A stretch of 64,000 bases of DNA from IMGVR_UViG_3300027816_000051:224261-288260; one strand, 5' to 3'; counted from the stretch's first letter, positions 3,372-55,115 are shown. Numbers and translations: made by a program. Notes: a model not told the origin generated them from the letters alone.

Positions 3372-3633
3372 ATGGATGTTTTTTAATTTGATACAAATGT
3401 AATACACTTTTCATTATAATCCAAATAAATCTTTATTTTTTTTTTCTGACCCCAGAATTCACCGTACCATCTCAGAAATTGGTTGGCATCTGTCATACAC
3501 CCGCCAAACTAAATTGAACACGGGATTTGCCGGCGACGAATTTTTTTAGCAAACAAAAAACCCCCACATTTCTGTGAGGGTTCCTTAACCAAATAAAACT
3601 AATCTATGAACGACAAATCAAGTGTATTACACT

Positions 3634-4855: not shown

Positions 4856-5090
4856 AATACAAATATACAATTCATTTTATGATATCCAAATTTATTTTAA
4901 AATATCCAATAACACCATCTACTGTTTCACCCGGCGTCGTAAAAATTTTGGTTGGCTGACCACATAAAACACTTAAATATAATAGGTTATCCGCCAAACA
5001 AAATCCCCACCAGGCGTGGGCTGGGCGAATTCTGGTATAAAAAAAAATCCCCGACTTTCGCCGAGGACTTTTCACCTAACCAAACAAAAT

Positions 5091-21457: not shown

Positions 21458-21552
21458 GTATTAAAGATACGAATTATTTCTATCAAATCAAAATATAAAA
21501 AATATTTTAAAATTTTTTTGGATATTCCAAAAATATGTTTTATGTTTGTGGT

Positions 21553-22224
21553 ATGAAAAGATTGATTCTGATATTATTATTGGTGAAGTCACAAATTGTT
21601 GTCTCTCAAACAAATCGTATCTCACAAGACTCTATTAATATCTATTTTCAAAATATTGTCAACGAGTATAGGGTTAACAATAACCTAAGTAGTTTATCTA
21701 TTGATACCACATTAAGTCCTTTTACAAAAAATTGGTCGGAGTACATGTTTAAACAAAATTATTGTGGACATGGTGTTGGCGACGAATCATTTGAAAATCG
21801 AGCAATTAATTTTGTATCTATAAGAGAACTTTATTGTGTTGAAAACGTGGCGGGTCCGTGGGATTTTACCAAAGACTTACCATATGATGTTGAAGACCCA
21901 AGTTACACATATTATACTAAAATTGGATTGGATGGTCTCGATTACAAATACAAATTAACCAGCACCGAAATACACACTTTATTGGATGTTGAAAATAAAA
22001 TAGGTGAAGGTGTAAACACCAACAAAAATATTGCAGTTTTCGTTTTTTATCTATGGAAAAACTCACCATCTCACAACGAAGCGTTATTAGATTATCAAAC
22101 AACTAAATTCTATGTTTCCATAACATATGTTGGTACAAAAATAACAGCGTCGTATTTAGCCACAAGTTCCCCGAAACCAATAAGTAAAAAAAGACAGGGA
22201 TGGTTAAGTAAATTATGTCGTTAG
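21553..22224 (+). CDS. Secreted CAP/SCP domain protein
   Basis: VNEYRVNNNL...GH...ENVA...WKNSPSHNEALL; signal peptide; TATGTTTG at 21541-21548. Confidence 0.8.
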   Translation: MKRLILILLLVKSQIVVSQTNRISQDSINIYFQNIVNEYRVNNNLSSLSIDTTLSPFTKNWSEYMFKQNYCGHGVGDESFENRAINFVSIRELYCVENVAGPWDFTKDLPYDVEDPSYTYYTKIGLDGLDYKYKLTSTEIHTLLDVENKIGEGVNTNKNIAVFVFYLWKNSPSHNEALLDYQTTKFYVSITYVGTKITASYLATSSPKPISKKRQGWLSKLCR

Positions 22225-22727: not shown

Positions 22728-22762
22728 TCTTTACATTTTTTTAAAGTAATCGTATACTTATA

Positions 22763-22850
22763 ATAGACCTTGTGGTTGAAGTCGAAGTGTCCTCGTGATA
22801 TTTGAGTTGGAATTGATACCAACGAATTCGGGTTCAAATACAAAAAAATA
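22763..22850 (+). promoter_or_regulatory. Structured 5' leader complementary to the gene's 3' UTR
   Basis: 22763-22778 pairs with 23661-23676; internal hairpin ~22799-22840; TTTACA-N17-TATACT at 22730-22758. Confidence 0.55.
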
Positions 22851-22858
22851 TAAGGAAT

Positions 22859-23653
22859 ATGAATTACACAACCTCAAACAGGTATGCTGTACCTCAATCT
22901 TTTATTACAAGAAGTAAACAAAGATTAAAACAGCACGTAGACACCGTATACATGAATAACGGTGATGAGTTCGAAATCGAACTTTACAATCCCACACAAA
23001 ATAAAGTTTTAGCTAAGATTGAACTGAATGGTAAATCCATCGGTAATGGTATCATAGTTCGTCCTGGTGAAAGAGTTTTCCTCGAAAGGTACTTAGACGA
23101 AGCGAGAAAGTTTTTGTTTGAAACTTATGTTGTAAATGGGAATAATGAAGAAGTCCAAAAATCCATAGAGAATAATGGTGACGTTGTTGTCAGATTTTAC
23201 GATGAAGTATCAACATACCCGTATTATGGTAGTATTCCCACTTGGAATAGTAATTGGAATAATAGTGGAACCCTTAGTTATCCACCGGGTGTAAGAACCT
23301 TTACAACAAATAATATGAATTCTATTAGTTCTTCATCATCTAATTATTCATATGTGAATGATACCATCACCAGTAGTATTGATGTGAACCTTAACATTCC
23401 AAAATTAAAAAAGAGTAAAGAAAGACACATTGAAACTGGTAGAGTTGAGAAAGGTTCTGAGTCAAACCAAACTTTTGTTTATGACAACAGTAATTTTAAC
23501 TCTTTTCCATGTAAAACAAATTGGTGGAAAATAAAACCAAATTCAACCAAAGTGATGGTTCGGGAAGATTTAACTGTTTACTGTACTGAATGTGGCTCAA
23601 AAAGAAAAAAAGATTCTCATAAATTTTGTCCCCATTGCGGAACAAAATATTAA
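22859..23653 (+). CDS. Conserved phage protein with C-terminal zinc ribbon
   Basis: EFEIELYNPT...FLERYLD...; CTECG...FCPHCG. Confidence 0.75.
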   Translation: MNYTTSNRYAVPQSFITRSKQRLKQHVDTVYMNNGDEFEIELYNPTQNKVLAKIELNGKSIGNGIIVRPGERVFLERYLDEARKFLFETYVVNGNNEEVQKSIENNGDVVVRFYDEVSTYPYYGSIPTWNSNWNNSGTLSYPPGVRTFTTNNMNSISSSSSNYSYVNDTITSSIDVNLNIPKLKKSKERHIETGRVEKGSESNQTFVYDNSNFNSFPCKTNWWKIKPNSTKVMVREDLTVYCTECGSKRKKDSHKFCPHCGTKY

Positions 23654-23677
23654 AATAAACTAATCACAAGGTCTATG

Positions 23678-23703
23678 AAGGGGTTACAGGTTGTAACCCT
23701 TTC
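23678..23703. terminator. Terminator hairpin
   Basis: gggttac-aggtt-gtaaccc between convergent genes. Confidence 0.7.
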
Positions 23704-23997
23704 TTATTTAAAATCAACAGGTATTGATTTTATATCACTAATCGTGATATTTTTTAAACCCAACGTACCGTGTGAAATTGGTGCGAATACACCTTGGGTA
23801 TGTAGGAATTGAAAATAATAATATAGGTACGTTGGGTCAATTTTGTTAAGGTATTCTTCTTTTACTTTAACACCAATGTTCTCTTCATAAAACTCCTTTG
23901 AGGGTTTACCGACACTTTGTTCGGAACCTTTTCTTTGTAACCAAAAATCGGCTTCGGGAAAATTGGTTTTAAATATACATACATCTCCTATTCTCAT
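23704..23997 (-). CDS. Small protein resembling a type I R-M HsdS target-recognition fragment
   Basis: IDPTYLYYYF...GT...NITISDIKSIPV. Confidence 0.45.
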   Translation of the reverse strand: MRIGDVCIFKTNFPEADFWLQRKGSEQSVGKPSKEFYEENIGVKVKEEYLNKIDPTYLYYYFQFLHTQGVFAPISHGTLGLKNITISDIKSIPVDFK

Positions 23998-39161: not shown

Positions 39162-40226
39162 CTATTTATCAAATCGTTTAAAAGCATTCATTGATATGTG
39201 ATTATATTTAACTCCACCAATAAAATGGTGGAGTTCTTTTTTTCCTGTATAACTCATTGCGGATTTCAAGTAAGATTCAAAATTATTAACCCACCCTTGA
39301 ATGGTGTATTCAACTTGTTGAGTTCTCACAACGCCTTCCGAAGTTGTTAGATTTTCCTTCCCCCAACTCATTTGGACTTCTTTGGTTGACATACCCCTGA
39401 AAGTTTTAAATAAACTAATATCTGCGTCAAACATTTCTTTTGTTTCTTTTGAATATTGGTCTACTTTTTCATAAACACTAATCATTGAGGTTCCAGTTTT
39501 TTTACTTGTTTCGCCAGCACTTTCTAAACACTTGTTTAAAATGGAACCTAACATTACAAAATCCGCACCTAGAGCCAACGCTTTGACGACATCTGAATAT
39601 TTTTTAAACCCACCATCTGCCACTATCTGAGTATTAGAAACAAATGGTCTTAAATTTTTAATTTTACGACATTCGGAAATCAGAGATGCCATAGGATAAC
39701 CAACACCTGTTTGGACAGTAGTTAAACACCCATTACCGTTACCAATACCAATTCTTACATAATCCGCACCAACTTTGGCGTATTCATAATAAGTTTCAGG
39801 ATTAGCAACATTACCAACCATTAATTTTATGTTTGAATTGTACTTTTGTTTAGCTCTATATGTCATATCTAATAAATCCGACATATGACCATTAGCAACA
39901 TCAATAAGAACCATCATTGGTTGACCTTCAGAATATTCTGTTCTTGTTGATTCTAAAAACAGTTTTTCAAAATCTGACATACTATAAGAGAGGAAAATAT
40001 CGCAATCCACCCACGATGAATCGGGGTTTTTGATTCGTGGAAGTACCGGTAGAATACCTTCTTTTTTAAATAAATTAAAATTATTTTTATCAACAACCGT
40101 ATCCATTGGTGCGGTCATTAATGGTAACATACCATTTTTTAATCTACAATTAATTTCACTACGTGAACGAATACTAGATATTATAGTTGGTTCAATTAAT
40201 AAATCGTCAAAATCGAACAGTTCCAT
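39162..40226 (-). CDS. GMP reductase / IMP dehydrogenase family protein (no CBS domains)
   Basis: FDFDDLL, APMDTV, IDVANGH, GNVA, GIGNGNGCLT, ADGG, KALALGADFVMLG, FRGMS, SEG. Confidence 0.88.
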   Translation of the reverse strand: MELFDFDDLLIEPTIISSIRSRSEINCRLKNGMLPLMTAPMDTVVDKNNFNLFKKEGILPVLPRIKNPDSSWVDCDIFLSYSMSDFEKLFLESTRTEYSEGQPMMVLIDVANGHMSDLLDMTYRAKQKYNSNIKLMVGNVANPETYYEYAKVGADYVRIGIGNGNGCLTTVQTGVGYPMASLISECRKIKNLRPFVSNTQIVADGGFKKYSDVVKALALGADFVMLGSILNKCLESAGETSKKTGTSMISVYEKVDQYSKETKEMFDADISLFKTFRGMSTKEVQMSWGKENLTTSEGVVRTQQVEYTIQGWVNNFESYLKSAMSYTGKKELHHFIGGVKYNHISMNAFKRFDK

Positions 40227-41114: not shown

Positions 41115-42371
41115 ATGTCTGATAATGGAAAAATTTTTATACAGATGGCTGCGTACAGGGATAAAGAACTGTTACCAACACTTAGAGATTGTATAGAGAA
41201 AGCTAAACACCCCGAAAATCTTGTATTTTCAATTGCATGGCAACATTCACAAGATGATGAGTGGGATAATTTAGATGAATTTAAATGTGACCCTCGATTT
41301 AAAATAATCGATATTAATTATACAAAAGCTAAAGGACCTTGTTGGGCTAGATACATGTTACAGCAACAATATGGTGGTGAACAATATACATTACAATTGG
41401 ATTCCCATCATAGGTTTATTCAAAATTGGGATTCGGAGTTGATAGAGGAATTAACAAAATTACAAGACAAGGGTTATAAAAAACCCATGTTAACAGGATA
41501 TATTCCATCATACGAACCCGAAAATGAACCAAATGGTAGATTGAATGTTCCGTGGAAAATGAATTTTGATAGATTCAGTCCCGATGGTAACGTACATTTT
41601 TTACCATCATCAATCGATGATTTTAAAGAAAGAGTTGAACCTGTCAGGGCTAGATTTTATTCGGCACACTTTTGTTTTACACTTGGACAATTTGCATTAG
41701 AAGTACAACACGACCCTGATTATTATTTCCATGGTGAGGAAATATCAATTTCTGTTAGGGCATATACTCATGGGTACGACCTCTTTCATTTACATAGGGT
41801 GATTATATGGCACTACTACACAAGAAAAGGTTCAACAAAACAATGGGATGATGACCCTGTATGGCACAAAAGAAACGAATATAGTCACTATAAAAATAGA
41901 AAACTATTTGGAATGGAAGACGATGGGAATAGTATCGATTTTGGTGATTTCGGGTTTGGTAAAAACAGAACATTAGACCAATACGAAAGGTATGCGGGTA
42001 TTTCATTTAGTAAGAGAGCCATCCAAAAATTTACATTGGAATATAATCACCCGCCAAATCCACATATTGAGGACCAAGTTGAGTATGATAATTCGTTTAC
42101 ATTCCAATTTAAACATTGTATTGATGTGGGATTCCATGACGTTCCACATGATGACTACACATTTTGGGCTGTAGCATTTTTAGATGAAAATGATAATGAA
42201 ATTTTTAGACAAGATGCTGGTTCTGATGAAATTAAGAGAATGAAGAATGACCCTGATGGGTATTGTAAAATATGGAGGACGTTTGAAACGACCGTAAAAC
42301 CTCATAAATGGATTGTTTGGCCATGTTCCGAAAAACATGGGTTTGGTGAAAGATTAGAAGGAAAACTTTAA
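41115..42371 (+). CDS. GT60-like GlcNAc-transferase (Skp1 Gnt1-like)
   Basis: IFIQMAAYRD, GPCWAR, QLDSHHRF, FHGEEI, WHYY. Confidence 0.85.
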   Translation: MSDNGKIFIQMAAYRDKELLPTLRDCIEKAKHPENLVFSIAWQHSQDDEWDNLDEFKCDPRFKIIDINYTKAKGPCWARYMLQQQYGGEQYTLQLDSHHRFIQNWDSELIEELTKLQDKGYKKPMLTGYIPSYEPENEPNGRLNVPWKMNFDRFSPDGNVHFLPSSIDDFKERVEPVRARFYSAHFCFTLGQFALEVQHDPDYYFHGEEISISVRAYTHGYDLFHLHRVIIWHYYTRKGSTKQWDDDPVWHKRNEYSHYKNRKLFGMEDDGNSIDFGDFGFGKNRTLDQYERYAGISFSKRAIQKFTLEYNHPPNPHIEDQVEYDNSFTFQFKHCIDVGFHDVPHDDYTFWAVAFLDENDNEIFRQDAGSDEIKRMKNDPDGYCKIWRTFETTVKPHKWIVWPCSEKHGFGERLEGKL

Positions 42372-42381
42372 AATATAAAAT

Positions 42382-43647
42382 ATGGAAAAAATACTAGTTC
42401 ATTTACCCGCATACAGAGAACCTGAATTAATACCAACAATAAAAAGTGCTTTGGAAAATGCACAATACCCCGAAAGAATACATTTTGGTATATGTAGACA
42501 ATTTAATCCTGATGATGGATTTGATAATGTTGATGAATATAGAGATGACCCAAGATTTAAGATTAAGGACATTCTATATACTGAAGCAAAAGGACTAGCA
42601 TATGCTAGGTCGGTAATAAACGAAGAATTATTAACCGATGAAGATTTTGTTTGTCAATTAGACTCACATCATAGATTCTCGGAAAATTGGGATTCTAAAT
42701 TAATCGGGTGGTACAATCAGTTAAAGGAAGAAGGTAATAATCCATTAATTTGTGGTTACCTACCATACTACGACCCTTTCAATGACCCTGAGAAAAGAGT
42801 ACAGGAACCATGGTTTTCAAGAGCTGAGTGTTTTTACCCTCACGGTACCATTTTTATACGACCATCAGCGGTCCGTGGTGGGTGGCAACATTTAACAAAA
42901 CCATACCCCGCTAGATTCATAAGTGGACATTTTTGTTTTGGTCCGAATAAATGGGCTAAAGAAGTTAGACACGACCCAAATATCTTTTTTGCTGGTGAAG
43001 AGATTAATCTATCAGTAAGGAGTTTTACTTATGGGTATGATTTGTTCCACCCACATGAGGTTGTAATATGGCACGCAACTATGAGAGAAGAAAGGGCGGG
43101 TATGTTGGTTTGGGATGACCAACACAAAAGAGGTGAAGGAACTTGGTGGAAAGGAAATGATATTGCTCGGTCTAGAATTAGACAATTATTAGGTACAGAA
43201 GATAATGGTCACGATTTGGGACCGTATGGTTTAGGTACGGTTAGAACAATACGTGATTATGAAAAATACGCTGGTATACATTTCAAAAAAAGAGCGTTTC
43301 AAAAATGGACCATTGATGATAAATTTCCACCAAATCCTCAATATGAGAATGAAGAAGAATGGGAAAATTCATTTACAAAATCTTTTTATTATTTGGTGAA
43401 TGTTGAAAGACAAGATTTACCTGAAAATGACTATGATTTTATTTTGATAGCGTTTGACGATGAAAATGGTATATCAATGTTTAACAAATATATTGACGGA
43501 CATAATTTAACAAGATTTTTAAATGGAGACGGTCCAATTCATTATGAAGAAATGTTCCATGTGGAAACAGAACCATCTAGAGTGGTTTATTGGGCACACT
43601 CACCTGAAAGAGGTTGGGTAGAAAAAAAACAAATAAATTTAAAATAA
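42382..43647 (+). CDS. GT60-like GlcNAc-transferase, paralog 2
   Basis: AYREPE, QLDSHHRF, FAGEEI; shared C-terminal domain. Confidence 0.85.
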   Translation: MEKILVHLPAYREPELIPTIKSALENAQYPERIHFGICRQFNPDDGFDNVDEYRDDPRFKIKDILYTEAKGLAYARSVINEELLTDEDFVCQLDSHHRFSENWDSKLIGWYNQLKEEGNNPLICGYLPYYDPFNDPEKRVQEPWFSRAECFYPHGTIFIRPSAVRGGWQHLTKPYPARFISGHFCFGPNKWAKEVRHDPNIFFAGEEINLSVRSFTYGYDLFHPHEVVIWHATMREERAGMLVWDDQHKRGEGTWWKGNDIARSRIRQLLGTEDNGHDLGPYGLGTVRTIRDYEKYAGIHFKKRAFQKWTIDDKFPPNPQYENEEEWENSFTKSFYYLVNVERQDLPENDYDFILIAFDDENGISMFNKYIDGHNLTRFLNGDGPIHYEEMFHVETEPSRVVYWAHSPERGWVEKKQINLK

Positions 43648-43657
43648 AAAAAAATAT

Positions 43658-44356
43658 ATGAGCAAATTTGTAGAATTACTAAAAGCATGTGACAATTTTA
43701 AGAAGACCACATACTATTGGGACCACGATGTCCTATTACCACACGAGAATAGTATTAGAAATTATCCGGCGCCTTGGATTATAAAGACTATTGAGTTATT
43801 AAAAATCATTGACGGAAAAGTCGTTGTTGAAATTGGTTCAACGAGGAGAGAATTGACACAAAACTGTATTTCATATCACGATAATTCAATGAAATTAGAA
43901 AGTAAAGACGGTCCTGCATGTTGTCAGGATGGTCACTCAACTTATTATTGGGCGAGAGAGGGTTTTGAAGTTCATACGGTAGATGTTGATGAATATTGTA
44001 AAACTCAAATTGAAAATGAATACAAATATCATATTCATGAACCTATACCTGATAATTTACACATACATATACCTCAAGACGGTATTGAATTTCTTAAAAA
44101 TTTTCAAGGTAAAATTGATTTATTGTTTTTAGACGGATGGGATAAAGGTACCCACGAATACGCGGAAAAACATTTAGAAGCGTTCATGGCCGCTCAAGAT
44201 AAATTATCCGATTTACATTTAATATCAATTGATGATACCGATTTTGACACTGAATCAGCGGGTAAGGATAAATATTTGACACCATACCTACTTGAAAATG
44301 GATATATCAGAGTACTTTGGGGTAGACAAACAGTTTATGTAAAAAATAGACCATAA
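43658..44356 (+). CDS. Class I SAM-dependent methyltransferase-like protein
   Basis: VVEIGS...IDLLFLDG...ISIDD. Confidence 0.75.
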   Translation: MSKFVELLKACDNFKKTTYYWDHDVLLPHENSIRNYPAPWIIKTIELLKIIDGKVVVEIGSTRRELTQNCISYHDNSMKLESKDGPACCQDGHSTYYWAREGFEVHTVDVDEYCKTQIENEYKYHIHEPIPDNLHIHIPQDGIEFLKNFQGKIDLLFLDGWDKGTHEYAEKHLEAFMAAQDKLSDLHLISIDDTDFDTESAGKDKYLTPYLLENGYIRVLWGRQTVYVKNRP

Positions 44357-44382
44357 AAGATAATTTTAGATAATTATTTGAT

Positions 44383-45744
44383 ATGGTAAAGTTAATTATA
44401 TTTGATTTAGATGGTGTTTTAGTTGAAACAAAAGAACTACATTTTAACACTTTGAATAATGCTCTGAGAGAAGTTGATGAAAAATATGTAATAACTTCTG
44501 AGGAACATTTATCGATATATGATGGATTAAAGACAACAGAAAAATTAGAGATATTAACTAAATATAAAGGTTTACCTGTTGAATTATATAATAAAATTTG
44601 GAGAAGAAAACAGGAGCTAACGATTGATGAATTAAATCATTTAGAAAAGGATAATAGACTTATTGAAATATTTAAAGAATTAAAACGTAAAAAATACAAA
44701 CTTATATGTTGTTCTAATTCTGTTAGGTCCACATTATTTGTTGTACTTTCTAAATTAGGTTTAATTGAATTTTTAGATTTAGTACTATCAAACGAAGATG
44801 TTAAAACAGGTAAACCCCATCCTGAAATTTATTGGAAGGGGATAAGTACTATGGGGGTTTTACCTGAGGAGTCTTTAATAATTGAAGATTCACCTTACGG
44901 TCTTCAATCCGCAAATAGAACATCGGCTCATGTACTTAGAGTTAATAATCCGAATTCATTAACACTTGAAACAATAGAAAAAAAATTGGAACAGATTAAA
45001 GAAAAAAATAAATTACAGTGGCCGGGTAATGATTTAAATATTCTCATCCCAATGGCGGGTGCAGGAAGTAGATTTCAAAAAGCTGGATTTAAATTACCTA
45101 AACCATTAATTGATGTTTTAGGTGAACCGATGATAAAAAAAGTAATAGATAGTCTTAATATCCAAGGTAATTACATTTTTATAGTACAAAAAGAACATCG
45201 CGAAAAATACAATTTGGATGTGATGTTAAATTTAATTGTACCTGGATGTAAAATAATAGAAACGGACGGTTTAACTGAAGGTGCCGCATGTACAACATTA
45301 TTAGCCAAAGACTTAATCAATAATGATAGTCCTTTATTGATTGCAAATTCAGACCAATACATTGAATGGGATAGTGTAAACTTCATGTATCTTATGAATG
45401 AGCAATCGTTAGATGGGGGTATATTAACATTTACTGCAGATAACCCAAAATGGTCTTTTGTTAGAACAAATGACACGGGATTAGTGACCGAAGTTGCTGA
45501 GAAGAAACCAATATCCAATCAAGCAACTGTAGGTGTTTATTATTGGGGTAAAGGTTCAAATTACGTAGAATGTGCCGAAAAAATGATTAGTAAAAATATT
45601 AGAGTAAACGATGAGTTTTATGTTTGTCCTGTTTACAATGAATCAATAGAAAATGGTGATAGAATTAAACCATACAATATTCAAAATATGTATGGTTTAG
45701 GCACACCTGAAGATTTAGAGAATTTTATTAATTTGAAAAAATGA
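44383..45744 (+). CDS. HAD phosphatase fused to sugar-phosphate nucleotidyltransferase (BcbE-like)
   Basis: FDLDGVL, KPHP, IEDS; IPMAGAGSRF, PKPLI, GAACT, NSDQ, EFYVCP, GLGTPEDL. Confidence 0.88.
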   Translation: MVKLIIFDLDGVLVETKELHFNTLNNALREVDEKYVITSEEHLSIYDGLKTTEKLEILTKYKGLPVELYNKIWRRKQELTIDELNHLEKDNRLIEIFKELKRKKYKLICCSNSVRSTLFVVLSKLGLIEFLDLVLSNEDVKTGKPHPEIYWKGISTMGVLPEESLIIEDSPYGLQSANRTSAHVLRVNNPNSLTLETIEKKLEQIKEKNKLQWPGNDLNILIPMAGAGSRFQKAGFKLPKPLIDVLGEPMIKKVIDSLNIQGNYIFIVQKEHREKYNLDVMLNLIVPGCKIIETDGLTEGAACTTLLAKDLINNDSPLLIANSDQYIEWDSVNFMYLMNEQSLDGGILTFTADNPKWSFVRTNDTGLVTEVAEKKPISNQATVGVYYWGKGSNYVECAEKMISKNIRVNDEFYVCPVYNESIENGDRIKPYNIQNMYGLGTPEDLENFINLKK

Positions 45745-46187
45745 TACTGATTTCACATAGAGGAAACATTGATGGTCCCAACGATGTAAGGGAAAATTCA
45801 CCATTTTATATTATGGAGGCCATTACCATGGGTTTTGATGTTGAGGTTGATATTTGGTATAAAAATGGTGATTTGTGGTTAGGTCACGACAAACCCGAAT
45901 ATAAAACATCAGAAGAGTGGTTAAAAGAAAGAAGTAATAATTTATGGATACATTGTAAGAATGTTGAGTCACTTTGTTTTTTTAATTCTTTGTCATATAA
46001 GTTTAATTATTTTTGGCATCAAGAGGATGTCGTGACCTTAACGTCATTAAATTTTATGTGGGTATATCCAGGAAAACAACCAATAAAAAATAGTATAGCA
46101 GTACTACCAGAAATCTTTAATGATGATATTAAAGATTGTACAGGTATATGTAGTGATTTTATAAAAAAATATAAAGAAGGGAATTAA
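45741..46187 (+). CDS. Short GDPD/PLC-like phosphodiesterase
   Basis: ISHRGN, DVEVDIW, LGHD, WIHCKN, GICSD. Confidence 0.75.
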   Translation: MILISHRGNIDGPNDVRENSPFYIMEAITMGFDVEVDIWYKNGDLWLGHDKPEYKTSEEWLKERSNNLWIHCKNVESLCFFNSLSYKFNYFWHQEDVVTLTSLNFMWVYPGKQPIKNSIAVLPEIFNDDIKDCTGICSDFIKKYKEGN

Positions 46188-46188
46188 A

Positions 46189-46992
46189 ATGAGAGTGGCG
46201 GTATGTTATTCGGGAATGTTTAGAAACTTTAACGAGACTATAGAAAATCACAAAGAGCATTTATTCTCGAAATATGATTGTGATGTTTATTTTAGTTTTT
46301 GGGATGTCTATGGTGATGGTGGGTTTACGTCAAAATATAGTACAAGTAAAAGAAAAACTTGGGATTTTAAAACAAATCAATTTATTGAAACAGAAGTATC
46401 AAACGATAAAATATTACAATCGGACATTGATGATGTTTTAACAAGATTAAATCCTGTAAAATATGAATTTGAGGAGTTTTCAAATTTTGAACCACTTTTT
46501 AATGCGAAATCCGAATTGATGAATCTTGTTTATAAAGAAAAACATGATTGGTTACCTCATTTACCAAATATTATGTCAATGTACTATAAAGTATATCGTT
46601 GTAATTACTTGGTTAAGTATTCAGGTAGAGAGTATGATTGTGTTTTAAGGTTACGACCTGATTTAATGTTTCATGATTTTGGATTAGAATTATTGAAACC
46701 TGAAACAAATACAATCAACATTAATTCATGGGGTTCATTTGAAAAAAATTATCAGGACATGTTTATATATGGTGATACAATTTCAATGGGTAAATTATCT
46801 AGATTATATTTTAATTTAGAAAAAATATGGCATGAGGCAGGAAGAAAATCAGGAAATGAACACGTTTTGTATTATTATCTTAATAATGTTACAGATGTAA
46901 ATATCAATATGGATACCTCGATTGAATTTTATAAAGTAAATAGAGGTCAATTAGGTTCCATGGCTGGATATTATTTACCCAACACACAATAA
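46189..46992 (+). CDS. Putative glycosyltransferase (VAVCYSG..R family), paralog 1
   Basis: VAVCYSGMFR...SMYYKV...YDCVLRLRPD. Confidence 0.65.
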   Translation: MRVAVCYSGMFRNFNETIENHKEHLFSKYDCDVYFSFWDVYGDGGFTSKYSTSKRKTWDFKTNQFIETEVSNDKILQSDIDDVLTRLNPVKYEFEEFSNFEPLFNAKSELMNLVYKEKHDWLPHLPNIMSMYYKVYRCNYLVKYSGREYDCVLRLRPDLMFHDFGLELLKPETNTININSWGSFEKNYQDMFIYGDTISMGKLSRLYFNLEKIWHEAGRKSGNEHVLYYYLNNVTDVNINMDTSIEFYKVNRGQLGSMAGYYLPNTQ

Positions 46993-46998
46993 AAAAAG

Positions 46999-47697
46999 AT
47001 GATAACATTAAAAAATTTAGAAATAACAGAAACACCTCAAGAATTCTTTGATGCATTTAATAAATTCATGTTAAGTGGTGACAAAAAAGTCTTCAATAAA
47101 TTGATTGCGCGAACATTATTATACAATGAGGTTAAGGATATTCCTGGTGACATTGTAGAATGTGGTGTTTTTAAAGGAACGGGATTGTATACATTTTTAA
47201 AATTAAGAAATCTATATAACCCTAATTCTGTTAAAAAAGTAATCGGATTTGATTTTTTTGATACTGAAAATTTAATCAATTCAATCACAGATAAATTCGA
47301 TAAGGAAACAATGAACACTCTATTTGAGGGTAGAAACTTTAGTCACGAAAATTCATTTAAAGATAATTTTAGAAATCAAATTTTATCTCATGGTTTTTCT
47401 GAATCAGAATTTGAATTAGTTGAGGGTGATGTTTCATCAACAACAAAGAAATTTTCACAAGAAAATCCTGGATTTAAAATATCATTACTTTACATGGATT
47501 TGGACTTGGAGGAGCCGACTTATAACACTTTAGTCAATTTGTGGGACAATATCACTAAGGGTGGTATCGTTGTATTTGATGAATATGGGTACCATAAATG
47601 GAGTGAATCTAAAGCGGTAGATAGGTTTATCCAAGAAAAGAATTTAGAATTAAAAACATTAAACTATTCGGCACCAACCGCATACATTAAAAAATAA
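46999..47697 (+). CDS. TylF/MycF-family O-methyltransferase-like protein
   Basis: GDIVECGVFKG, GFDFF, MDLDLEEPT, GGIVVFDEY. Confidence 0.82.
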   Translation: MITLKNLEITETPQEFFDAFNKFMLSGDKKVFNKLIARTLLYNEVKDIPGDIVECGVFKGTGLYTFLKLRNLYNPNSVKKVIGFDFFDTENLINSITDKFDKETMNTLFEGRNFSHENSFKDNFRNQILSHGFSESEFELVEGDVSSTTKKFSQENPGFKISLLYMDLDLEEPTYNTLVNLWDNITKGGIVVFDEYGYHKWSESKAVDRFIQEKNLELKTLNYSAPTAYIKK

Positions 47698-47700
47698 TTT

Positions 47701-48390
47701 ATGCAAGTAGTAATATTGGCGGCAGGTCGTGGTACAAGATTTAACGGGTCAGAATTTGATAATCCTAAACCTTTAATAGAATGGGATGGTAAAACCATGA
47801 CTAATCACGTAATAGAAAACTTTAAGGGTGATAACGTAAAGATTATTCTAATTAAAAGGGACGAACACCCAATACATCACAAAGATGTAAACATTATCAA
47901 TATTGATTGGATTACTGAAGGCCCAGCATGTACTGCACATCTGAGTAAAGATATTGTTGACATGGATTCTGAATTAGTAATTGTGAACTGTGACCAAATA
48001 ATTTTAGATTGGGACAAAACGATGTTTTTAAATTTTGCAAGAAACTTTGATGCTGTGATTGGTTGTTTCATTTCAAATAAACCAAATAATTCATATGTTA
48101 AATTAAATAATGAAAATTTGGTTACCGAAGTAAAGGAAAAAGAAGTCATCTCAAATATCGCAACGAATGGTTTACATTATTGGAAAAAAGCGAGATATTT
48201 TTTTGAATCATTTGAAGAAATGTTCACTAATAAAGATACAACCAATAAAGAATATTACGTCGCACCAACTTATAACTACCTAATTAAAAATGGGTATAAG
48301 GTTGGTATCTTTATGTTTAACCAACATCACCCAATTGGGACACCTGAAGATTTAAAAAAATACCTAAGCATAAAGAAAACACAAATATGA
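47701..48390 (+). CDS. Sugar-phosphate nucleotidyltransferase (BcbE-like), paralog 2
   Basis: ILAAGRGTRF, PKPLI, GPACT, NCDQ, EYYVAP, IGTPEDL. Confidence 0.85.
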   Translation: MQVVILAAGRGTRFNGSEFDNPKPLIEWDGKTMTNHVIENFKGDNVKIILIKRDEHPIHHKDVNIINIDWITEGPACTAHLSKDIVDMDSELVIVNCDQIILDWDKTMFLNFARNFDAVIGCFISNKPNNSYVKLNNENLVTEVKEKEVISNIATNGLHYWKKARYFFESFEEMFTNKDTTNKEYYVAPTYNYLIKNGYKVGIFMFNQHHPIGTPEDLKKYLSIKKTQI

Positions 48391-48710
48391 AAATAACAAA
48401 ATTTGACGAATACAAAGGTGGATGGTTCATTGGTGATTTTGAGCCTGCCGCGTTTAAAACAAAGGATTTTGAGGTTTGTTTTAAACACCACACCAAAGGT
48501 GAAAAATGGGACACTCACTATCACAAACAAGGGACTGAAATAAATTACTTGGTTAAAGGTAAAATGATGATACAAAATACCGAATTAAATGAGGGAGATA
48601 TTTTTATTCTTTACCCATACGAAGTTGCAGACCCTGAATTTTTAGAAGATTGTACCGTATTAATTGTTAAAACACCATCAGTAAAAGGAGATAAATTTAT
48701 AATACCATGA
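48387..48710 (+). CDS. Cupin domain protein
   Basis: GGWFIGDFEP; HYHK..TE..Y...GK. Confidence 0.8.
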   Translation: MKITKFDEYKGGWFIGDFEPAAFKTKDFEVCFKHHTKGEKWDTHYHKQGTEINYLVKGKMMIQNTELNEGDIFILYPYEVADPEFLEDCTVLIVKTPSVKGDKFIIP

Positions 48711-49936
48711 TTAACATATTCACAAAAGATATTGATTTAGAAAAGTACTTTGTTGTTACATACTTTTTAGAATCAAAAACATCATTAAGAGAGGCTGCAT
48801 GGAATTTGGCTATTGGTCAAAGTATTGGTAACCCTAACAATAGAAGCGTGTGGGAAACTGAAGAAATGTTTTTGAACCATAGTTGTTTTATAATGGAGGA
48901 TGAAGATTATTTAAAATCTTTAAAAGAAGGTATTGTAAAATTTGCATTCCCATTGTCAAACATTAATTTGGAAGAAGATGGTATTTCACAAATACTCTGT
49001 CATATAGCTGGAGGTCAAGTAGATATTTTAGAAATTCAAAAATGTCAAATACTAAATGTTGAATTACCTGAAAAAATAGAAGTTAAATTTAAATTAAAAC
49101 CCGCATTTGGTATAGATGGTTTTAGGGAATTTAATGGTGTAAACGGTAAACCTTTTTTTGGTGGTATAATTAAACCCAAAGTTGGTATGTCACCTGAAGT
49201 TTTGTTAGAAGCCGTAAAAGAAATGGTACAAGGTGGTGTTAACTTCATTAAAGAAGATGAGTTATTAGCCAATCCCGACCATTGTCCTCTTGAAAAAAGA
49301 GTTCCATTAATCACTAATTGGTTAAGAGAAAACGCTCCAAATGTGATTTATTGTTTTTGTATTAATGGTGATAGTCCATATGCACTAGAAAGAGCAAAAT
49401 TTGTTTCAGATAATGGTGGTAATGGTATACACATAAATGTTTGGAGTGGATTGGGGGTGTATAGAGCAATCAGAAAACAAAATCCTAATTTGTGGATACA
49501 TTTCCAAAAAAGTGGTGATAAATTTTTTACAGATAAAAGAGCACCATTTCACATTTATTGGCCGGTTATCTGTAAAATCGCTGGTTGGTCTGGTGTTGAT
49601 TCTATACACGCTGGTATGATTGGTGGTTACATGAATCAAGACGAAAAAGAATTAGAAGATTCTTTAAATGTTTTATGGAATTACAATATTGTACCCGCAT
49701 TAAGTTGTGGTATGCATCCCGGATTGGTACAATACATAAATGAATTGTTAAATAGTTTTGATTGGATGGCTAATGTTGGTGGTGCAATGCACGGACACCC
49801 AATGGGTACTCTATCAGGTGGTTTAGCTATGAAACAAGCAATTAACAAAGAATTCGACAAAATAGAATATAAAACAGCCATTGAAAAGTGGGGAAATAAA
49901 GAATTTAATCCCGATTTGGCTTACAGATTTTTTTAA
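48707..49936 (+). CDS. RuBisCO-like protein (Form IV, non-carboxylating)
   Basis: IIKPKVG, FIKEDE, DSIHAG, ALSCG, GGAMHGHP; equivalents of E60, N123, H294, K334 appear substituted. Confidence 0.9.
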   Translation: MINIFTKDIDLEKYFVVTYFLESKTSLREAAWNLAIGQSIGNPNNRSVWETEEMFLNHSCFIMEDEDYLKSLKEGIVKFAFPLSNINLEEDGISQILCHIAGGQVDILEIQKCQILNVELPEKIEVKFKLKPAFGIDGFREFNGVNGKPFFGGIIKPKVGMSPEVLLEAVKEMVQGGVNFIKEDELLANPDHCPLEKRVPLITNWLRENAPNVIYCFCINGDSPYALERAKFVSDNGGNGIHINVWSGLGVYRAIRKQNPNLWIHFQKSGDKFFTDKRAPFHIYWPVICKIAGWSGVDSIHAGMIGGYMNQDEKELEDSLNVLWNYNIVPALSCGMHPGLVQYINELLNSFDWMANVGGAMHGHPMGTLSGGLAMKQAINKEFDKIEYKTAIEKWGNKEFNPDLAYRFF

Positions 49937-49942
49937 AATAAA

Positions 49943-50641
49943 ATGAGAATATTAATTACAAAATACCATAAAGCCGGTGATGTAATCGGATGGGAGAATG
50001 GAGTCGATAAACTTACAAACGGTGAGGATGTTTATATTGATGTAGAAGAGCAACCAACAACAATACCTGGTTTAAAATTTAAACCTCAAATGATTGGTTA
50101 TGATAATGATAATGAAGATTATTTTTGGAAGTTTTGTACTGCCGAAGTCTCTCAACAAAGTTACGATTTAGTAAAAGAAATCACAAAGGATTATATGACA
50201 CATGGTATATTAGAAATTGGAGTTTCAAGAAATTCTGATGGTTCTTTTTGCCACGCAATGTTGTTTAATAAGCCTGACCACATACCTTATTTAGGTGTCG
50301 ATTTAGATGATAAATCTTATTTAAATAACTCATCTAAAAAAATACATACCATTCAAGAAAATTCATATAACCAAGAATTGATTAGAAATTACATGAAAGA
50401 AATTGGTATAGATAAAATATCAATTCTTTTTATTGATGGTCACCATTCGGTGAACACAGTTATTAATGATTGGTTATATTCAGATTTATTATCTGATAAT
50501 GGTATTGTTATTTTTCACGACACTAATTTTCATACAGGACCTACAATCTTTATCGAAGCAATTGACAGGAATCAATATGATGTGGTGAAATATTTTGAAG
50601 AGTATAACGATTACGGAGTGTCTATTGCGTATAAAAAATAA
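49943..50641 (+). CDS. Class I SAM-dependent methyltransferase (Methyltransf_24-like)
   Basis: ILEIGV...LFIDGHH...GIVIFHD. Confidence 0.8.
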   Translation: MRILITKYHKAGDVIGWENGVDKLTNGEDVYIDVEEQPTTIPGLKFKPQMIGYDNDNEDYFWKFCTAEVSQQSYDLVKEITKDYMTHGILEIGVSRNSDGSFCHAMLFNKPDHIPYLGVDLDDKSYLNNSSKKIHTIQENSYNQELIRNYMKEIGIDKISILFIDGHHSVNTVINDWLYSDLLSDNGIVIFHDTNFHTGPTIFIEAIDRNQYDVVKYFEEYNDYGVSIAYKK

Positions 50642-50644
50642 TTT

Positions 50645-51484
50645 ATGAAAGTAGCGGTTTGTTATTCTGGAATGATTAGAGGGTTTTTAGGGAATATTGA
50701 AAACCACAAAGAATTTTTATTGTCAAAATATGATTGTGATGTTTACCTCAGTTTTTGGGATGTTTATGGATTTGGTTATTTACCATTTTCAAGATATAAA
50801 TCTGATAAACACATTAGATTCAACATTGAAGAAAATAAGTGTGAAGTAATTCCAATTATTGAGTCTGACTTGATTAGTGAATCAATTAAAAAAGAAATAA
50901 TACATAAATTAAATCCTAAAAATTACATATTTGAATCATTCAAATCATATGAACCAACACTACAAGAAAGGGAAAAACCTTTAATTGAAAAATATGAATA
51001 CAATGAAACAAATTGTAATATCGGTCAACTATTGGCTTGGAATACCTTAGGTGGTTATTATAGAATATACAAATGTGGTGAAATGGTTAAAAATTCTAAC
51101 ATTAATTACGATGTTGTTGTTAGAATGAGACCTGATAGTATTTTAGAAAATACGGTGATTTTACAAAAACCGGAAAATAGTATCATATATGGTAATCAAC
51201 ACGCATCTTGGGGTAATGACACAATAAATGATTCTTTATTATATGGTAATATGGAATCGATGGAAATCTATAGAAATATGCACAATCATTTAATAGACAT
51301 ATTTCACAAGACCCAAGGACCCGGTAACGCTGCTGAACATTTATTGTATGTTTATTTAACAAGTATGGGTTTAAAAATAAACAAAGATTTATATGCACCA
51401 ACACACAGTTATCACAATTATAGAGAAAAAGAAAAGTCTGAAGAATTACAAAATTCAATTTGGTTTAAAGAATTAGGAAAATAA
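50645..51484 (+). CDS. Putative glycosyltransferase (VAVCYSG..R family), paralog 2
   Basis: VAVCYSGMIR...YDVVVRMRPD. Confidence 0.65.
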   Translation: MKVAVCYSGMIRGFLGNIENHKEFLLSKYDCDVYLSFWDVYGFGYLPFSRYKSDKHIRFNIEENKCEVIPIIESDLISESIKKEIIHKLNPKNYIFESFKSYEPTLQEREKPLIEKYEYNETNCNIGQLLAWNTLGGYYRIYKCGEMVKNSNINYDVVVRMRPDSILENTVILQKPENSIIYGNQHASWGNDTINDSLLYGNMESMEIYRNMHNHLIDIFHKTQGPGNAAEHLLYVYLTSMGLKINKDLYAPTHSYHNYREKEKSEELQNSIWFKELGK

Positions 51485-52287
51485 TGAAAGTTGCTGTTTG
51501 TTATTCTGGTATGTTGAGGGGATTTGAAGATTTTATAAAAAATCATCATGACTTTTTATTGTCAAAATATGACTGCGATATCTACTTGAATTTTTGGGAC
51601 GTATATGGGTATGGTGTTCAACCATATTCTAAGTATACATCCAAAAATCATTATCGATTTACAGGATTTCATGGTGAAAATAAAAATAAAATCGAAGTCA
51701 TACCAATAACAGAATCTGAATTAATAGACGATGAAACAAAAGATAGGATAATATCAAAACTAAAACCAAAAGATTTTGTTTTTGACTCATTTGTTTCAAT
51801 GGAGCCATTTTTTGAAGAAAAGGAAAAATATTTTTACAAAAGGTGGGATTTAGATTCTATGAGTTTGCAATTACCATCACTATTAATGATGAATGTCATG
51901 GGAATGTATTATCGAATATATAAATGTGGTGAAATGGTACAAAATTCTGGTGTAAAATATGATATTGTTGTTAGAAATAGGACTGACACGACCTTTACAA
52001 GCGAATTGATTTTACAAAAACCCGAGCCAAATACAATTTACACTAATTCAGTACAATCTTGGCCCGAAGCAGTAAATGATACACTACTTTATGGTAACAT
52101 GGATGTAATGTGGAAATATCAAAAAATGTATCTTGATTTATTTTCACTTTGGGATGAAGTGGCGGTGTGGAATTCTGCAGAACATTTATTATACAAGTAT
52201 TTAAAGACAAACAATTTTATAATAAATTCAGATTTGTCAATGATGACACATAATGAGAATACATACAAACTAAGGAAATCGAAATGA
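51484..52287 (+). CDS. Putative glycosyltransferase (VAVCYSG..R family), paralog 3
   Basis: VAVCYSGMLR...YDIVVRNRTD; closely similar to 50645. Confidence 0.65.
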   Translation: MKVAVCYSGMLRGFEDFIKNHHDFLLSKYDCDIYLNFWDVYGYGVQPYSKYTSKNHYRFTGFHGENKNKIEVIPITESELIDDETKDRIISKLKPKDFVFDSFVSMEPFFEEKEKYFYKRWDLDSMSLQLPSLLMMNVMGMYYRIYKCGEMVQNSGVKYDIVVRNRTDTTFTSELILQKPEPNTIYTNSVQSWPEAVNDTLLYGNMDVMWKYQKMYLDLFSLWDEVAVWNSAEHLLYKYLKTNNFIINSDLSMMTHNENTYKLRKSK

Positions 52288-53195
52288 ATTTTATAAATAG
52301 ACTATTCAATAATAAAAATGATAAAGACATGATTCAAAATTTGAGATTTTTAATTAATACTCATGATAAAAACTTGTCTTTAGCGGAATTGTCTTTAAAA
52401 CATTTTTTTAAACATAATAAAAGAGATGATTTAAAAATAACAATTGTAAGTAATAAATTTAATACGGAAGATTTAAAATATTCCGATAAAGTCACATATT
52501 ATAGTAGTAATATTAACTTACATTGTCAAGGATATCATTTTAAAGAAACTATGCTTAGTGCTTTAAAAGAAATAAGTGAGGATTACATTTTCTTTTTATT
52601 AGATGATTATTTTTTTATTGAAGAAATAAAATACCATGATTTAAACGATGCATTGAATTTAATTAAATGTGAAAATATTGACTATTTTGGTTTTGATGAT
52701 ATTGGTGGTATTTTAAAACTTAGCGATTTTGAAAAATTAAATAGTTCTTGTGAAAGTAATATTAAGGATGAACTTTATTTAAGACATAAGGATTATCAAT
52801 ATTTGTTTAGCGTACAACCATGTATTTGGAAAAGAAAATCACTAATTGAATTATTGGAAAGTCATGAAAATATATCATTACATGATTTGGATGAGACGAA
52901 ACCATATATTAGAGAGTCCGGTTTAAAATTTAAAAGTACAATGTCAGGATTAAGGTCCTGTTTTGATTATGCTTTTAATATTGATTTACAAAAAAGACCT
53001 GATGATTATTATATTATCGCATACACTGAGATAGTAAGACACGGGTGTTTTAACATACCTGAAAACGGTAAACCAGTAAGTCCAAATGACTATAGTGTAA
53101 GATTTACATATAACTTAATTGAAGAGGAGGATTTGGGTAGTAAAAAAGAATTTAGACACCTGTTACCACCTTCTCTACACAAACTAAACAATTAA
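52284..53195 (+). CDS. Putative GT-A glycosyltransferase
   Basis: YIFFLLDDYF; SVQPCIWKR. Confidence 0.6.
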   Translation: MNFINRLFNNKNDKDMIQNLRFLINTHDKNLSLAELSLKHFFKHNKRDDLKITIVSNKFNTEDLKYSDKVTYYSSNINLHCQGYHFKETMLSALKEISEDYIFFLLDDYFFIEEIKYHDLNDALNLIKCENIDYFGFDDIGGILKLSDFEKLNSSCESNIKDELYLRHKDYQYLFSVQPCIWKRKSLIELLESHENISLHDLDETKPYIRESGLKFKSTMSGLRSCFDYAFNIDLQKRPDDYYIIAYTEIVRHGCFNIPENGKPVSPNDYSVRFTYNLIEEEDLGSKKEFRHLLPPSLHKLNN

Positions 53196-53196
53196 A

Positions 53197-54222: not shown

Positions 54223-54273
54223 ATAGACCATTTATTTTCAGACTAAAAATTATTAAATTTTGAAAAAATACTT

Positions 54274-55107: not shown

Positions 55108-55115
55108 TAAAAAAC

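What the first reader, a model, noticed from the sequence alone, without database searches (positions are those of the whole stretch)
22763..23703. Gene enclosed by complementary 5' and 3' UTR arms
Seen: ATAGACCTTGTGGTTG (22763-22778), just after the promoter, pairs with TAATCACAAGGTCTAT (23661-23676), just before the terminator: 14 Watson-Crick pairs plus 2 G-U. The leader also has a ~16-bp hairpin (~22799-22840). G-U compatibility on the sense strand points to RNA pairing. Inference: an end-to-end closed mRNA (stabilising stalk, RNase III site, circularisation or autoregulation by the encoded zinc-ribbon protein).
Basis: partly seen in the sequence, partly recalled or inferred. Interest (0 to 1): 0.62.

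Follow-up and report, generated by a model that had tools for sequence, protein, structure and literature searches.

The report
End-paired mRNA of a huge phage
The start and the end of one phage messenger RNA are complementary, and this pairing, with a folded leader next to it, is kept in dozens of related huge phages of SD-less (probably Bacteroidota) hosts, so it is a real, undescribed RNA element that most likely protects or controls the message.

Summary
22763-22778 pairs with 23661-23676: 12 exact pairs, 2 more Watson-Crick pairs and 2 G-U. This is the strongest 5'-flank/3'-flank helix among 312 genes of the 288-kb phage genome.

It is not chance. All 58 related phage loci with both flanks carry the same long-range helix (P1). 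It starts a few bases after a TATA-like box and ends just before a non-conserved terminator hairpin. Flanking columns show compensatory changes and G-U wobbles only on the sense strand. Two more distant lineages keep the design with unrelated arm sequences.

Between the 5' arm and the start codon lies a covariation-supported three-way junction (P2 enclosing P3 and P4). No Rfam family matches.

The phage encodes ribosomal protein bS21 and its genes lack Shine-Dalgarno sequences, which fits a Bacteroidota host.

Most likely function (inferred): an end-to-end clamp that shields both mRNA ends from ribonucleases, as in the Bacillus subtilis hbs mRNA.

In the main clades the 5' arm can instead pair with an invariant UAAGG box beside the start codon. 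That allows a switch permitting translation only when the 3' end is intact. No ends, half-lives or binding were measured.

The parts
22730..22735 (+). -35-like hexamer TTTACA. Present in many but not all related loci.
   Evidence: scan. Searches show it in part of clade A; in other loci an upstream terminator T-run takes its place.
22753..22762 (+). TATA-like / -10-like box (TATACTTATA). Conservation across relatives begins here. The transcription start is inferred to lie at or a few bases before the 5' arm.
   Evidence: Clade D has TATATAAT at the same place. No transcript 5' end was mapped.
22763..22778 (+). 5' arm of the long-range helix P1. The conserved core is 22766-22776. The last two bases compete with the outer pairs of P2.
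   Evidence: Pair probabilities are 0.71-1.00 in the fold of the whole mRNA.
22777..22786 (+). P2, 5' strand: the closing helix of the leader three-way junction.
   Evidence: RNAalifold. 8 of 9 pairs show changes on both sides.
22787..22801 (+). P3 hairpin. The stem is 22787-22791 with 22797-22801 and the loop is variable.
   Evidence: 5 of 5 pairs covary and 100% of cells are paired.
22806..22823 (+). P4 hairpin. The stem is GUUGG/CCAAC, 22806-22810 with 22819-22823. Its sequence is nearly invariant.
   Evidence: 2 of 5 pairs covary and 100% of cells are paired.
22827..22836 (+). P2, 3' strand.
22837..22858 (+). A-rich, unstructured translation initiation region. It holds the invariant UAAGG box (22851-22855). 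Bases 22849-22855 can pair with 22768-22774 of the 5' arm as an alternative helix.
   Evidence: 98.8% paired, with one covarying column (GU 30, UA 8, GC 6). One search shows the genome otherwise lacks SD-like motifs.
22859..23653 (+). ORF of 264 aa: N-terminal Ig-like beta-sandwich, variable N/S/T-rich linker, ETGRVEKG motif, C-terminal CxxC...CxxC zinc ribbon.
   Evidence: 2646 relatives. One copy per genome.
23661..23676 (+). 3' arm of P1. The conserved core is 23662-23673. It begins 7 nt after the stop codon.
23677..23712 (+). Intrinsic-terminator-like hairpin (23677-23703) with a T-rich tail. It abuts P1 directly.
   Evidence: Relatives have a GC hairpin plus T-run of unrelated sequence at the same place.

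Best explanation
The gene at 22859-23653 is a monocistronic transcription unit whose mRNA folds back on itself. The first bases of the transcript (5' arm, 22763-22778) pair with the last bases before the terminator hairpin (3' arm, 23661-23676) to form helix P1, which is shown by comparative analysis. Just inside P1 the leader forms a conserved three-way junction, P2 enclosing hairpins P3 and P4. An A-rich, unpaired start region follows (also shown). Inferred function: P1 can stack on the terminator hairpin and buries the 5' end in a duplex. Neither end is then available to 5'-end-dependent or 3'-exonucleolytic decay, and leader cleavage sites are masked. This would give a long-lived, fully translatable message for a core protein of these huge phages. 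It would work like the 14-nt 5'/3'-UTR interaction of the Bacillus subtilis hbs mRNA. The junction is probably a binding site for a factor not yet identified.
For: The helix exists and is unique in the genome. It ranks 1 of 312 genes.

It is present in 58 of 58 related loci with both flanks. It always sits 89-104 nt before the ATG and immediately before a terminator hairpin whose own sequence is not conserved.

Over 14 columns, 91% of cells are paired against 84% in shuffles (0 of 1000 as high). The covariation score is 0.224 against 0.114. Register shifts give 27-45% paired.

G-C to A-U and G-C to U-A exchanges occur on both sides on the same branches.

Sense-strand G-U cells number 78 against 15 A-C cells, so the pairing is in RNA of the + strand.

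Clade D (about 30-35% protein identity) has arms of unrelated sequence, UAGCUGUUCG with CGAACAGCUA. These arms are 92-100% paired over 11 columns except one at 85%, and have their own compensatory changes. L114/L117 have a third arm pair, UCUCACUUUGUU with AACAAAGUGAGA, at the homologous model positions.

Folding of the whole 950-nt mRNA puts P1 in the minimum-energy structure with probabilities 0.71-1.0. Cofolding gives a mean of 0.98 in 58 loci.

The start region stays mostly unpaired when P1 is formed (0.70).

A precedent exists for a stabilising interaction just upstream of a terminator (PMC5737220).
Against: No transcript ends were mapped. The transcription start is inferred from a promoter-like box, and a start some 15-20 nt further upstream cannot be excluded.

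The RNA-library evidence is only short assembled contigs inside the ORF.

Stabilisation was not measured.

A plain clamp does not explain why the junction sequence is nearly invariant, nor why the arm core ACCUUGU never varies in clades A-C.

Independent evolutionary contrasts per column are few (2-4; all concordant, but the sign test is not significant).

Lak phages, L134 and L115 show no clear P1.
Confidence: 0.55

Rival explanations
1. Integrity-licensing switch. In nascent or 3'-truncated transcripts the 5' arm (CCUUGUG) pairs with the UAAGG box 4-10 nt before the AUG and masks the start region. Once the 3' arm is made, its longer complementarity captures the 5' arm and frees the start region. 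Only complete messages would then be translated. This is the mirror image of hok mRNA, where end-pairing keeps the message silent.
For: RNAalifold on the leader alone predicts this helix. It is 98.8% paired in 48 leaders against 34-55% in slid registers. One column covaries through three pair types: GU 30, UA 8, GC 6. UAAGG is invariant although the genome's other genes have no SD-like signal, and Bacteroidia ribosomes ignore such short SDs (PMC9976891). A three-partner constraint would explain why the arm core never varies. In clade B the modelled probability of the alternative helix is 0.5-0.85.
Against: Five of the seven pairs never vary, so they carry no evidence. The modelled probability is only 0.28 in the window and 0.29 on average, and start-region accessibility rises only from 0.59 to 0.70. 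Clade D keeps P1 but shows no such alternative helix.
Confidence: 0.2
2. Autoregulatory operator. The encoded protein, or another phage or host factor, binds the P2-P4 junction next to P1 and sets translation or decay of its own message.
For: The junction sequence is far more conserved than the protein. Leaders are nearly identical at 46-76% protein identity. The C-terminus is a basic zinc ribbon. A covariance model of the leader finds it only upstream of this gene.
Against: No binding data exist. Clade D keeps the RNA design, but its protein ends in a different C-terminal domain, not a zinc ribbon. The N-domain is a generic Ig-like sandwich with no nucleic-acid-binding relatives.
Confidence: 0.15
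3. RNase III processing stalk. P1 is cut on both strands, trimming the leader start and removing the terminator, as in rRNA precursors or T7 early mRNAs.
For: A double-stranded stem is formed by sequences flanking a gene. It can stack on the adjacent terminator hairpin to give about 28 bp in the window.
Against: The conserved helix is only 10-16 bp, below the roughly two helical turns usual for RNase III substrates (own knowledge). The gap to the terminator hairpin varies between loci.
Confidence: 0.07
4. Chance, or a DNA-level inverted repeat such as a recombination site of an invertible segment, transposon ends, or two binding sites for one protein.
For: Short inverted repeats are common; 71 pairs of at least 11 nt lie in the surrounding 3.5 kb.
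Against: The helix ranks 1 of 312 genes. It is conserved with compensatory changes and with three unrelated arm sequences. Wobbles are G-U on the sense strand only. None of 58 loci has the segment inverted relative to the TATA-like box and terminator.
Confidence: 0.02

Closest known systems
Bacillus subtilis hbs mRNA 5'/3'-UTR long-range interaction (Braun, Durand, Condon 2017; PMC5737220)
   Same: A 14-nt stretch of a structured 5' UTR pairs with a fully complementary sequence just upstream of the intrinsic terminator (about -19 kcal/mol). The mRNA is monocistronic. The pairing limits endonuclease cleavage in the leader, and a 3' arm mutation speeds decay. The geometry and duplex energy here are alike (median about -20 kcal/mol).
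   Different: In hbs the 5' partner lies downstream of two hairpins, not at the transcript start, and a very strong SD with bound ribosomes is central. Here the 5' arm comes first, a three-way junction follows, the host is probably SD-blind, and the element belongs to phages. The effect on decay is not measured here.
hok/sok and aapA/IsoA type I toxin mRNAs: tac/fbi end-pairing (PMC9841398; PMC6733600)
   Same: [quoted passage not shown] The 5' element has alternative partners, so the fold depends on whether the 3' end is present.
   Different: Those are small toxin ORFs with an antisense RNA. End-pairing there keeps the ribosome site sequestered, and 3' trimming activates the message. Here the ORF encodes 264 aa, no antisense partner is seen, and the closed form is predicted to leave the start region open.
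Staphylococcus aureus icaR mRNA 3'-UTR/5'-UTR pairing (PMC3868564)
   Same: A 3' UTR sequence pairs with the 5' UTR of the same mRNA and controls its fate.
   Different: In icaR the 3' UTR carries an anti-SD motif that covers the SD and recruits RNase III. Here the 3' arm pairs with the transcript start, not the start-codon region, and itself resembles the UAAGG box.
rRNA operon and phage T7 RNase III processing stems
   Same: Complementary sequences flanking a functional RNA form a stem.
   Different: Those stems are 20 bp or longer (own knowledge). This one has a 10-16 bp conserved helix, and no processing evidence exists.

Membership tests
Stabilising 5'/3'-UTR long-range interaction (hbs type) | At least 12 nt of complementarity between the 5' UTR and a site just upstream of the terminator of the same mRNA | tested here: met
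   The 3' arm abuts the terminator hairpin. The pairing is conserved in 58 of 58 loci.
Stabilising 5'/3'-UTR long-range interaction (hbs type) | Disrupting the pairing shortens mRNA half-life or increases leader cleavage, and compensatory changes restore it | not testable with these tools
   Needs reporter and rifampicin-chase experiments.
Type I toxin mRNA end-pairing (hok tac/fbi, aapA) | [quoted passage not shown] | tested here: met
Type I toxin mRNA end-pairing (hok tac/fbi, aapA) | Small hydrophobic toxin ORF (under about 60 aa) with a cis-encoded antisense RNA | tested here: not met
   The ORF encodes 264 aa with a beta-sandwich domain and a zinc ribbon. No antisense promoter-terminator unit was noted.
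Type I toxin mRNA end-pairing (hok tac/fbi, aapA) | The closed full-length form has its ribosome-binding region sequestered | tested here: not met
   With P1 formed, the start region is on average 0.70 unpaired in 58 loci.
icaR-type 3'-UTR anti-SD pairing | The 3' UTR pairs with the SD / start region | tested here: not met
   The 3' arm pairs with 22763-22778, about 75 nt upstream of the UAAGG box.
RNase III processing stalk | Continuous or near-continuous helix of about 20 bp or more | tested here: not met
   The well-conserved core is 10 columns (at least 91% paired); the helix is 16 pairs in the window. Only stacking on the terminator hairpin would reach that length.
Any Rfam family (riboswitch, ribozyme, leader, tRNA-like) | Covariance-model match at the gathering score | tested here: not met
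   No match in the window at gathering thresholds. Only chance-level hits at E 3-9 near the locus. ARAGORN finds no tRNA or tmRNA.
Invertible DNA segment / transposon terminal repeats | Both orientations occur among relatives, and the two arms are symmetric at the DNA level | tested here: not met
   0 of 58 loci are inverted. Mismatches are sense-strand G-U, 78 against 15 A-C.

The most novel reading that the evidence does not exclude
The element is a three-partner RNA switch that tests the integrity of its own message. The 5'-terminal arm masks the start region (UAAGG box) until, and only while, the 3'-terminal arm is present. A huge phage of an SD-blind Bacteroidota host would therefore translate this core gene only from complete transcripts. 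This is the functional mirror image of hok end-pairing. The junction next to the helix could let a factor set the balance.
Probability: 0.2. Interest if true: 0.85.

Novelty: new variant of a known kind. Interest (0 to 1): 0.68.

Why it matters
Natural bacterial mRNAs whose two ends pair are known from only a handful of cases: hok and aapA toxins, hbs and icaR. Most rest on one gene in one species.

Here the same principle is found in a phage. It is kept across a large radiation of huge phages, including relatives of published megaphage genomes. Support comes from covariation and from three unrelated arm sequences.

It is joined to a conserved three-way-junction leader that is in no RNA family library. 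This gives an undescribed cis-acting RNA family with a clear, testable design.

It also offers a way to ask how messages are stabilised or licensed for translation in Bacteroidota. Their ribosomes ignore Shine-Dalgarno sequences, and these phages carry their own ribosomal protein bS21.

Tried and rejected
DNA search of the GenBank phage collection with the locus found no match.

Protein function stayed open. PHROGs gave no family. Pfam gave only sub-threshold zinc-ribbon hits. The ESM Atlas gave only viral hypothetical proteins.

The whole-protein AlphaFold model was poor (pLDDT 56.6) and had no PDB match. The N-domain model was good (pLDDT 84.6), but it matches only generic Ig-like sandwiches.

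A giant eukaryotic virus was considered and dropped. There is no NCLDV capsid hit, although that family rang in none of the 14 control genomes, so the blank is weak. There is also no RNA polymerase. The Atlas labels the protein's clusters Uroviricota. Relatives occur in Prevotella Lak phages.

A tRNA-like or tmRNA-like reading was rejected: no ARAGORN hit and no T-arm before the 3' arm.

A hammerhead-like reading of the junction was rejected: the junction strands do not fit and there is no Rfam hit.

The small ORF starting in the 3' arm (23675-23812) was rejected because the ATG is absent in relatives.

No shared promoter motif was found by searching the genome for the TATA-like box.

Two full-length partition-function batches timed out. 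I replaced them with cofolding of leader plus 3' UTR.

duplexfold over-extended helices into terminators, so its pair counts are rough.

The RNA-library search gave only assembled contigs. Three runs hold 100% identical pieces inside the ORF and one holds a relative's piece. They show neither ends nor proven transcription.

Supplementary tables of the bS21-phage paper list a zinc-ribbon family near bS21. I judged from genome distance that it is probably not this gene, but did not verify this.

Full report
**The observation.**
- ATAGACCTTGTGGTTG lies at 22763-22778 and TAATCACAAGGTCTAT at 23661-23676.
- They give 12 contiguous exact pairs, then G-U, A-U, A-U and G-U.
- The repeat finder reports the pair independently (I24).
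- The exact 12-mer occurs at these two places only, both in the window and in the whole genome.
- A sigma-70-like site (TTTACA, 17 nt, TATACT) ends at 22758.
- A 12-pair hairpin with a T-rich tail occupies 23677-23703, starting on the base after the 3' arm.
- The enclosed ORF (22859-23653, 264 aa) ends in a CxxC...CxxC zinc ribbon. Pfam scores it just under its cut-offs (22.2 against 25 bits).

**Is it chance in this genome?**
- The window is the last 64 kb of a 288,260-bp virus record.
- I called 312 non-overlapping ORFs in that genome. For each I scored the best ungapped helix between 110 nt upstream and 60 nt downstream.
- This gene ranks first: 16 pairs and score 34, against a median of 16 and a 99th percentile of 24.8.

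**What the genome is.**
- It has no RNA polymerase large subunit. No NCLDV capsid hit was found either, but that search rang in no control genome, so it is weak evidence.
- It does carry a ribosomal protein bS21 gene (PF01165, 41.6 bits).
- Its 312 genes show no Shine-Dalgarno signal. SD-like words are no more common at -18 to -7 than further upstream, and the region before start codons is A-rich and G-poor.
- Homologues of the protein (30-45% identity) occur in Prevotella Lak megaphages and in published huge-phage assemblies.
- This fits the freshwater bS21-encoding phages of up to 331 kb that are predicted to infect Bacteroidetes (PMC9723584). Ribosomes of these hosts ignore ordinary SD sequences (PMC9976891).
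- The host assignment is an inference.

**Conservation of the long-range helix (P1).**
- The protein family is large, with 2646 hits.
- Two scans of viral contigs gave 28 and 80 loci, which hold 60 distinct flank sets.
- All 58 loci that have both flanks carry the helix.
- The 5' arm lies 89-104 nt before the ATG, a few bases after a TATA-like box.
- The 3' arm core begins 10-20 nt after the stop codon (42 and 48 nt in two loci).
- The 3' arm always precedes a GC hairpin plus T-run whose own sequence differs from locus to locus.
- The core ACCUUGU / ACAAGGU is invariant. The flanking columns change together:
  - GACC/GGUC in clade A, AACC/GGUU in clades B and C;
  - CUUGUG/CACAAG against CUUGUU/AACAAG;
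  - a G-U that becomes A-U or G-C.

**Statistics for P1.**
- Over 14 columns and 55 distinct arm pairs, 91% of cells pair. Shuffles give 84% (0 of 1000 as high).
- The covariation score is 0.224 against 0.114 ± 0.010. Shifted registers give 27-45% paired.
- On a protein tree the G-C/A-U column changes five times on each side and five times as a pair, so both sides change on the same branches.
- Strictly independent contrasts are few: 2-4 per column. All are concordant, but no single column reaches significance.
- Non-Watson-Crick cells are mostly G-U on the sense strand (78 cells) rather than A-C (15 cells). Together with the ORF and terminator orientation, this places the pairing in + strand RNA, not in DNA.

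**Independent lineages.**
- A sister clade (D) has about 30-35% protein identity. It shares the N-terminal domain but has a different C-terminus.
- It keeps the whole design with unrelated arms: UAGCUGUUCG right after TATATAAT, and CGAACAGCUA right before the terminator.
- Ten of these eleven columns are 92-100% paired and one is 85%, in 13 distinct loci.
- This clade has its own compensatory variants (GUUAU/AUAAC, GUUCAA/UUGAAC) and its own sense-strand G-U pairs.
- A third lineage (L114/L117) pairs UCUCACUUUGUU with AACAAAGUGAGA.
- A covariance model built from clades A-C places that 5' arm at model positions 1-12.
- The same model finds exactly one copy in the window (111 bits). It also finds full-length matches directly upstream of the gene in L118 (41.6 bits), L115 (33), L114/L117 (30.5), L119 (28.1) and L130 (24.4).
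- The leader is therefore homologous over this whole range.
- Lak phage loci, L134 and L115 show no convincing P1.
- The gene is single-copy in this genome.

**The leader fold.**
- An alignment of 48 distinct leaders folds into a three-way junction. In window coordinates:
  - P2 is 22777-22786 with 22827-22836;
  - P3 is 22787-22791 with 22797-22801;
  - P4 is 22806-22810 with 22819-22823.
- An unpaired A-rich tract follows, up to the ATG.
- For the full consensus structure (26 pairs, including the alternative arm:box helix described below), 98.2% of cells pair and 16 pairs have changes on both sides. No shuffle out of 500 reaches any measure.
- Clade D leaders fold into the same P2[P3,P4] design with different sequences.
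It is 76.8% paired with no covariation, no better than shuffles.
- No Rfam family matches, and there is no tRNA or tmRNA.

**Thermodynamics.**
- The whole 950-nt mRNA of the window folds with P1 in its minimum-energy structure. Pair probabilities are 0.71-1.00.
- Cofolding the leader with the 3' UTR gives P1 a mean probability of 0.98 in 58 loci.
- The median duplex energy is about -20 kcal/mol.

**An alternative partner for the 5' arm.**
- Folding the leaders alone pairs CCUUGUG of the arm (22768-22774) with UAUAAGG just before the start codon (22849-22855).
- The UAAGG box is invariant in clades A-C, although the genome does not use SD sequences. It lies only 3-6 nt from the AUG. It is also far weaker than the extended SDs that Bacteroidia ribosomes can use. 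It is therefore probably not a working SD.
- The helix is 98.8% paired against 34-55% in slid registers. Five of its seven pairs never vary, and only one column covaries (GU 30, UA 8, GC 6).
- Its modelled probability is 0.28 in the window, 0.29 on average and 0.5-0.85 in clade B.
- Clade D shows no such helix.
- I treat this as a real possibility, not a finding.

**Mechanism.**
- Shown: a conserved sense-strand helix between the start of the leader and the end of the 3' UTR; a conserved junction beside it; an open start region.
- Inferred: the transcript starts at or just before the arm and ends at the terminator. P1 therefore buries the 5' end and stacks on the terminator hairpin.
- The best-supported function is protection of the message from ribonucleases. 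The experimentally studied precedent is the B. subtilis hbs mRNA. There a 14-nt 5' UTR sequence pairs with a site just upstream of the terminator (-19 kcal/mol), limits RNase Y cleavage, and a 3' arm mutation speeds decay (PMC5737220).
- The strong part of the 3' arm begins about 11 nt after the stop codon. A terminating ribosome would therefore melt at most the weak inner pairs (my inference from the spacing).
- Rival or additional roles are set out under the rival explanations:
  - an integrity-licensing switch, the reverse of hok, where end-pairing silences the message (PMC9841398);
  - an operator for the encoded protein or another factor;
  - an RNase III stalk.

**The protein.**
- The N-terminal 120 residues model as an Ig-like beta-sandwich (pLDDT 84.6). 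It has no informative structural relatives.
- A variable N/S/T-rich linker follows, then an invariant ETGRVEKG motif, then the zinc ribbon.
- Its function remains unknown.

**Expression.**
- Three freshwater metatranscriptome runs from three studies hold contigs identical to parts of the ORF. A fourth holds a relative's contig reaching into the leader from 22800.
- These are assembled contigs from RNA libraries. They prove neither transcription nor any transcript end.

**Verdict.** The finding is real. It is a conserved, undescribed cis-acting RNA design of a huge-phage core gene. It belongs to the small known class of end-paired bacterial mRNAs and differs from each known example. Its function is inferred, not shown.

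Noticed in passing
whole genome (window is G000:C1:224261-288260); counts from 312 ORF-called genes: The phage genome shows no Shine-Dalgarno signal before its genes; the upstream region is A-rich and G-poor. The invariant UAAGG 4-8 nt before this gene's ATG is therefore an exception.
   Followed up: partly
outside the window: G000:C1:28129-28287 (-), locus L172: The phage encodes a ribosomal protein bS21 homologue (PF01165, 41.6 bits). This fits the freshwater bS21 phages predicted to infect Bacteroidetes (PMC9723584).
   Followed up: partly
outside the window: G000:C1:211275-211544 (-), = L173:476-745 (-): The runner-up in the genome-wide 5'/3' flank test is an 89-aa K/A/P-rich, histone-like protein. 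Its upstream AGGAUUUGGUU pairs with AACCAAAUCCU in the 3' UTR (15 pairs). Three diverged relatives (L184-L186) keep the pairing through G-U and compensatory changes. The 3' partner overlaps the 5' strand of the terminator hairpin, so it may be a different kind of element.
   Followed up: partly
window 3503-3514 (-); 1-mismatch copy 4993-5004 (-); seven more exact copies at genome 211-218 kb (-): The 12-mer ATTTAGTTTGGC is repeated 8 times, always on the minus strand and in intergenic positions, often after a GC-rich stretch. It resembles the Bacteroidetes -7 promoter box TAnnTTTG (own knowledge) and may mark a class of phage promoters.
   Followed up: partly
window 41115-57488 (+): A long co-directional block of sugar-modifying genes: two GlcNAc-type glycosyltransferases, a HAD hydrolase/nucleotidyltransferase, and a TylF methyltransferase fused to glycosyltransferase domains. 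At 48707-49936 there is a RuBisCO large-chain-like protein (PF00016, E 1e-31).
   Followed up: no
window 39162-40226 (-): An IMP dehydrogenase / GMP reductase family protein encoded by the phage (PF00478, E 2e-43).
   Followed up: no
window 21535-22224 (+): A CAP / cysteine-rich secretory protein family domain (PF00188, 30.5 bits) with a hydrophobic N-terminus, two genes upstream of the element.
   Followed up: no
window 23677-23703 and 23704-23997 (-): The terminator hairpin sits between convergent genes. The minus-strand ORF ends at 23704, the base after the hairpin, so the hairpin may serve both transcripts. A minus-strand read-through transcript would carry a copy of the 5'-arm sequence.
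   Followed up: no
loci L111-L113 (Prevotella Lak phages): The homologous reading frames contain in-frame TAG codons. This is consistent with the stop-codon recoding reported for Lak phages (own knowledge). No alternative code was applied, and no P1-like pairing was evident there.
   Followed up: no
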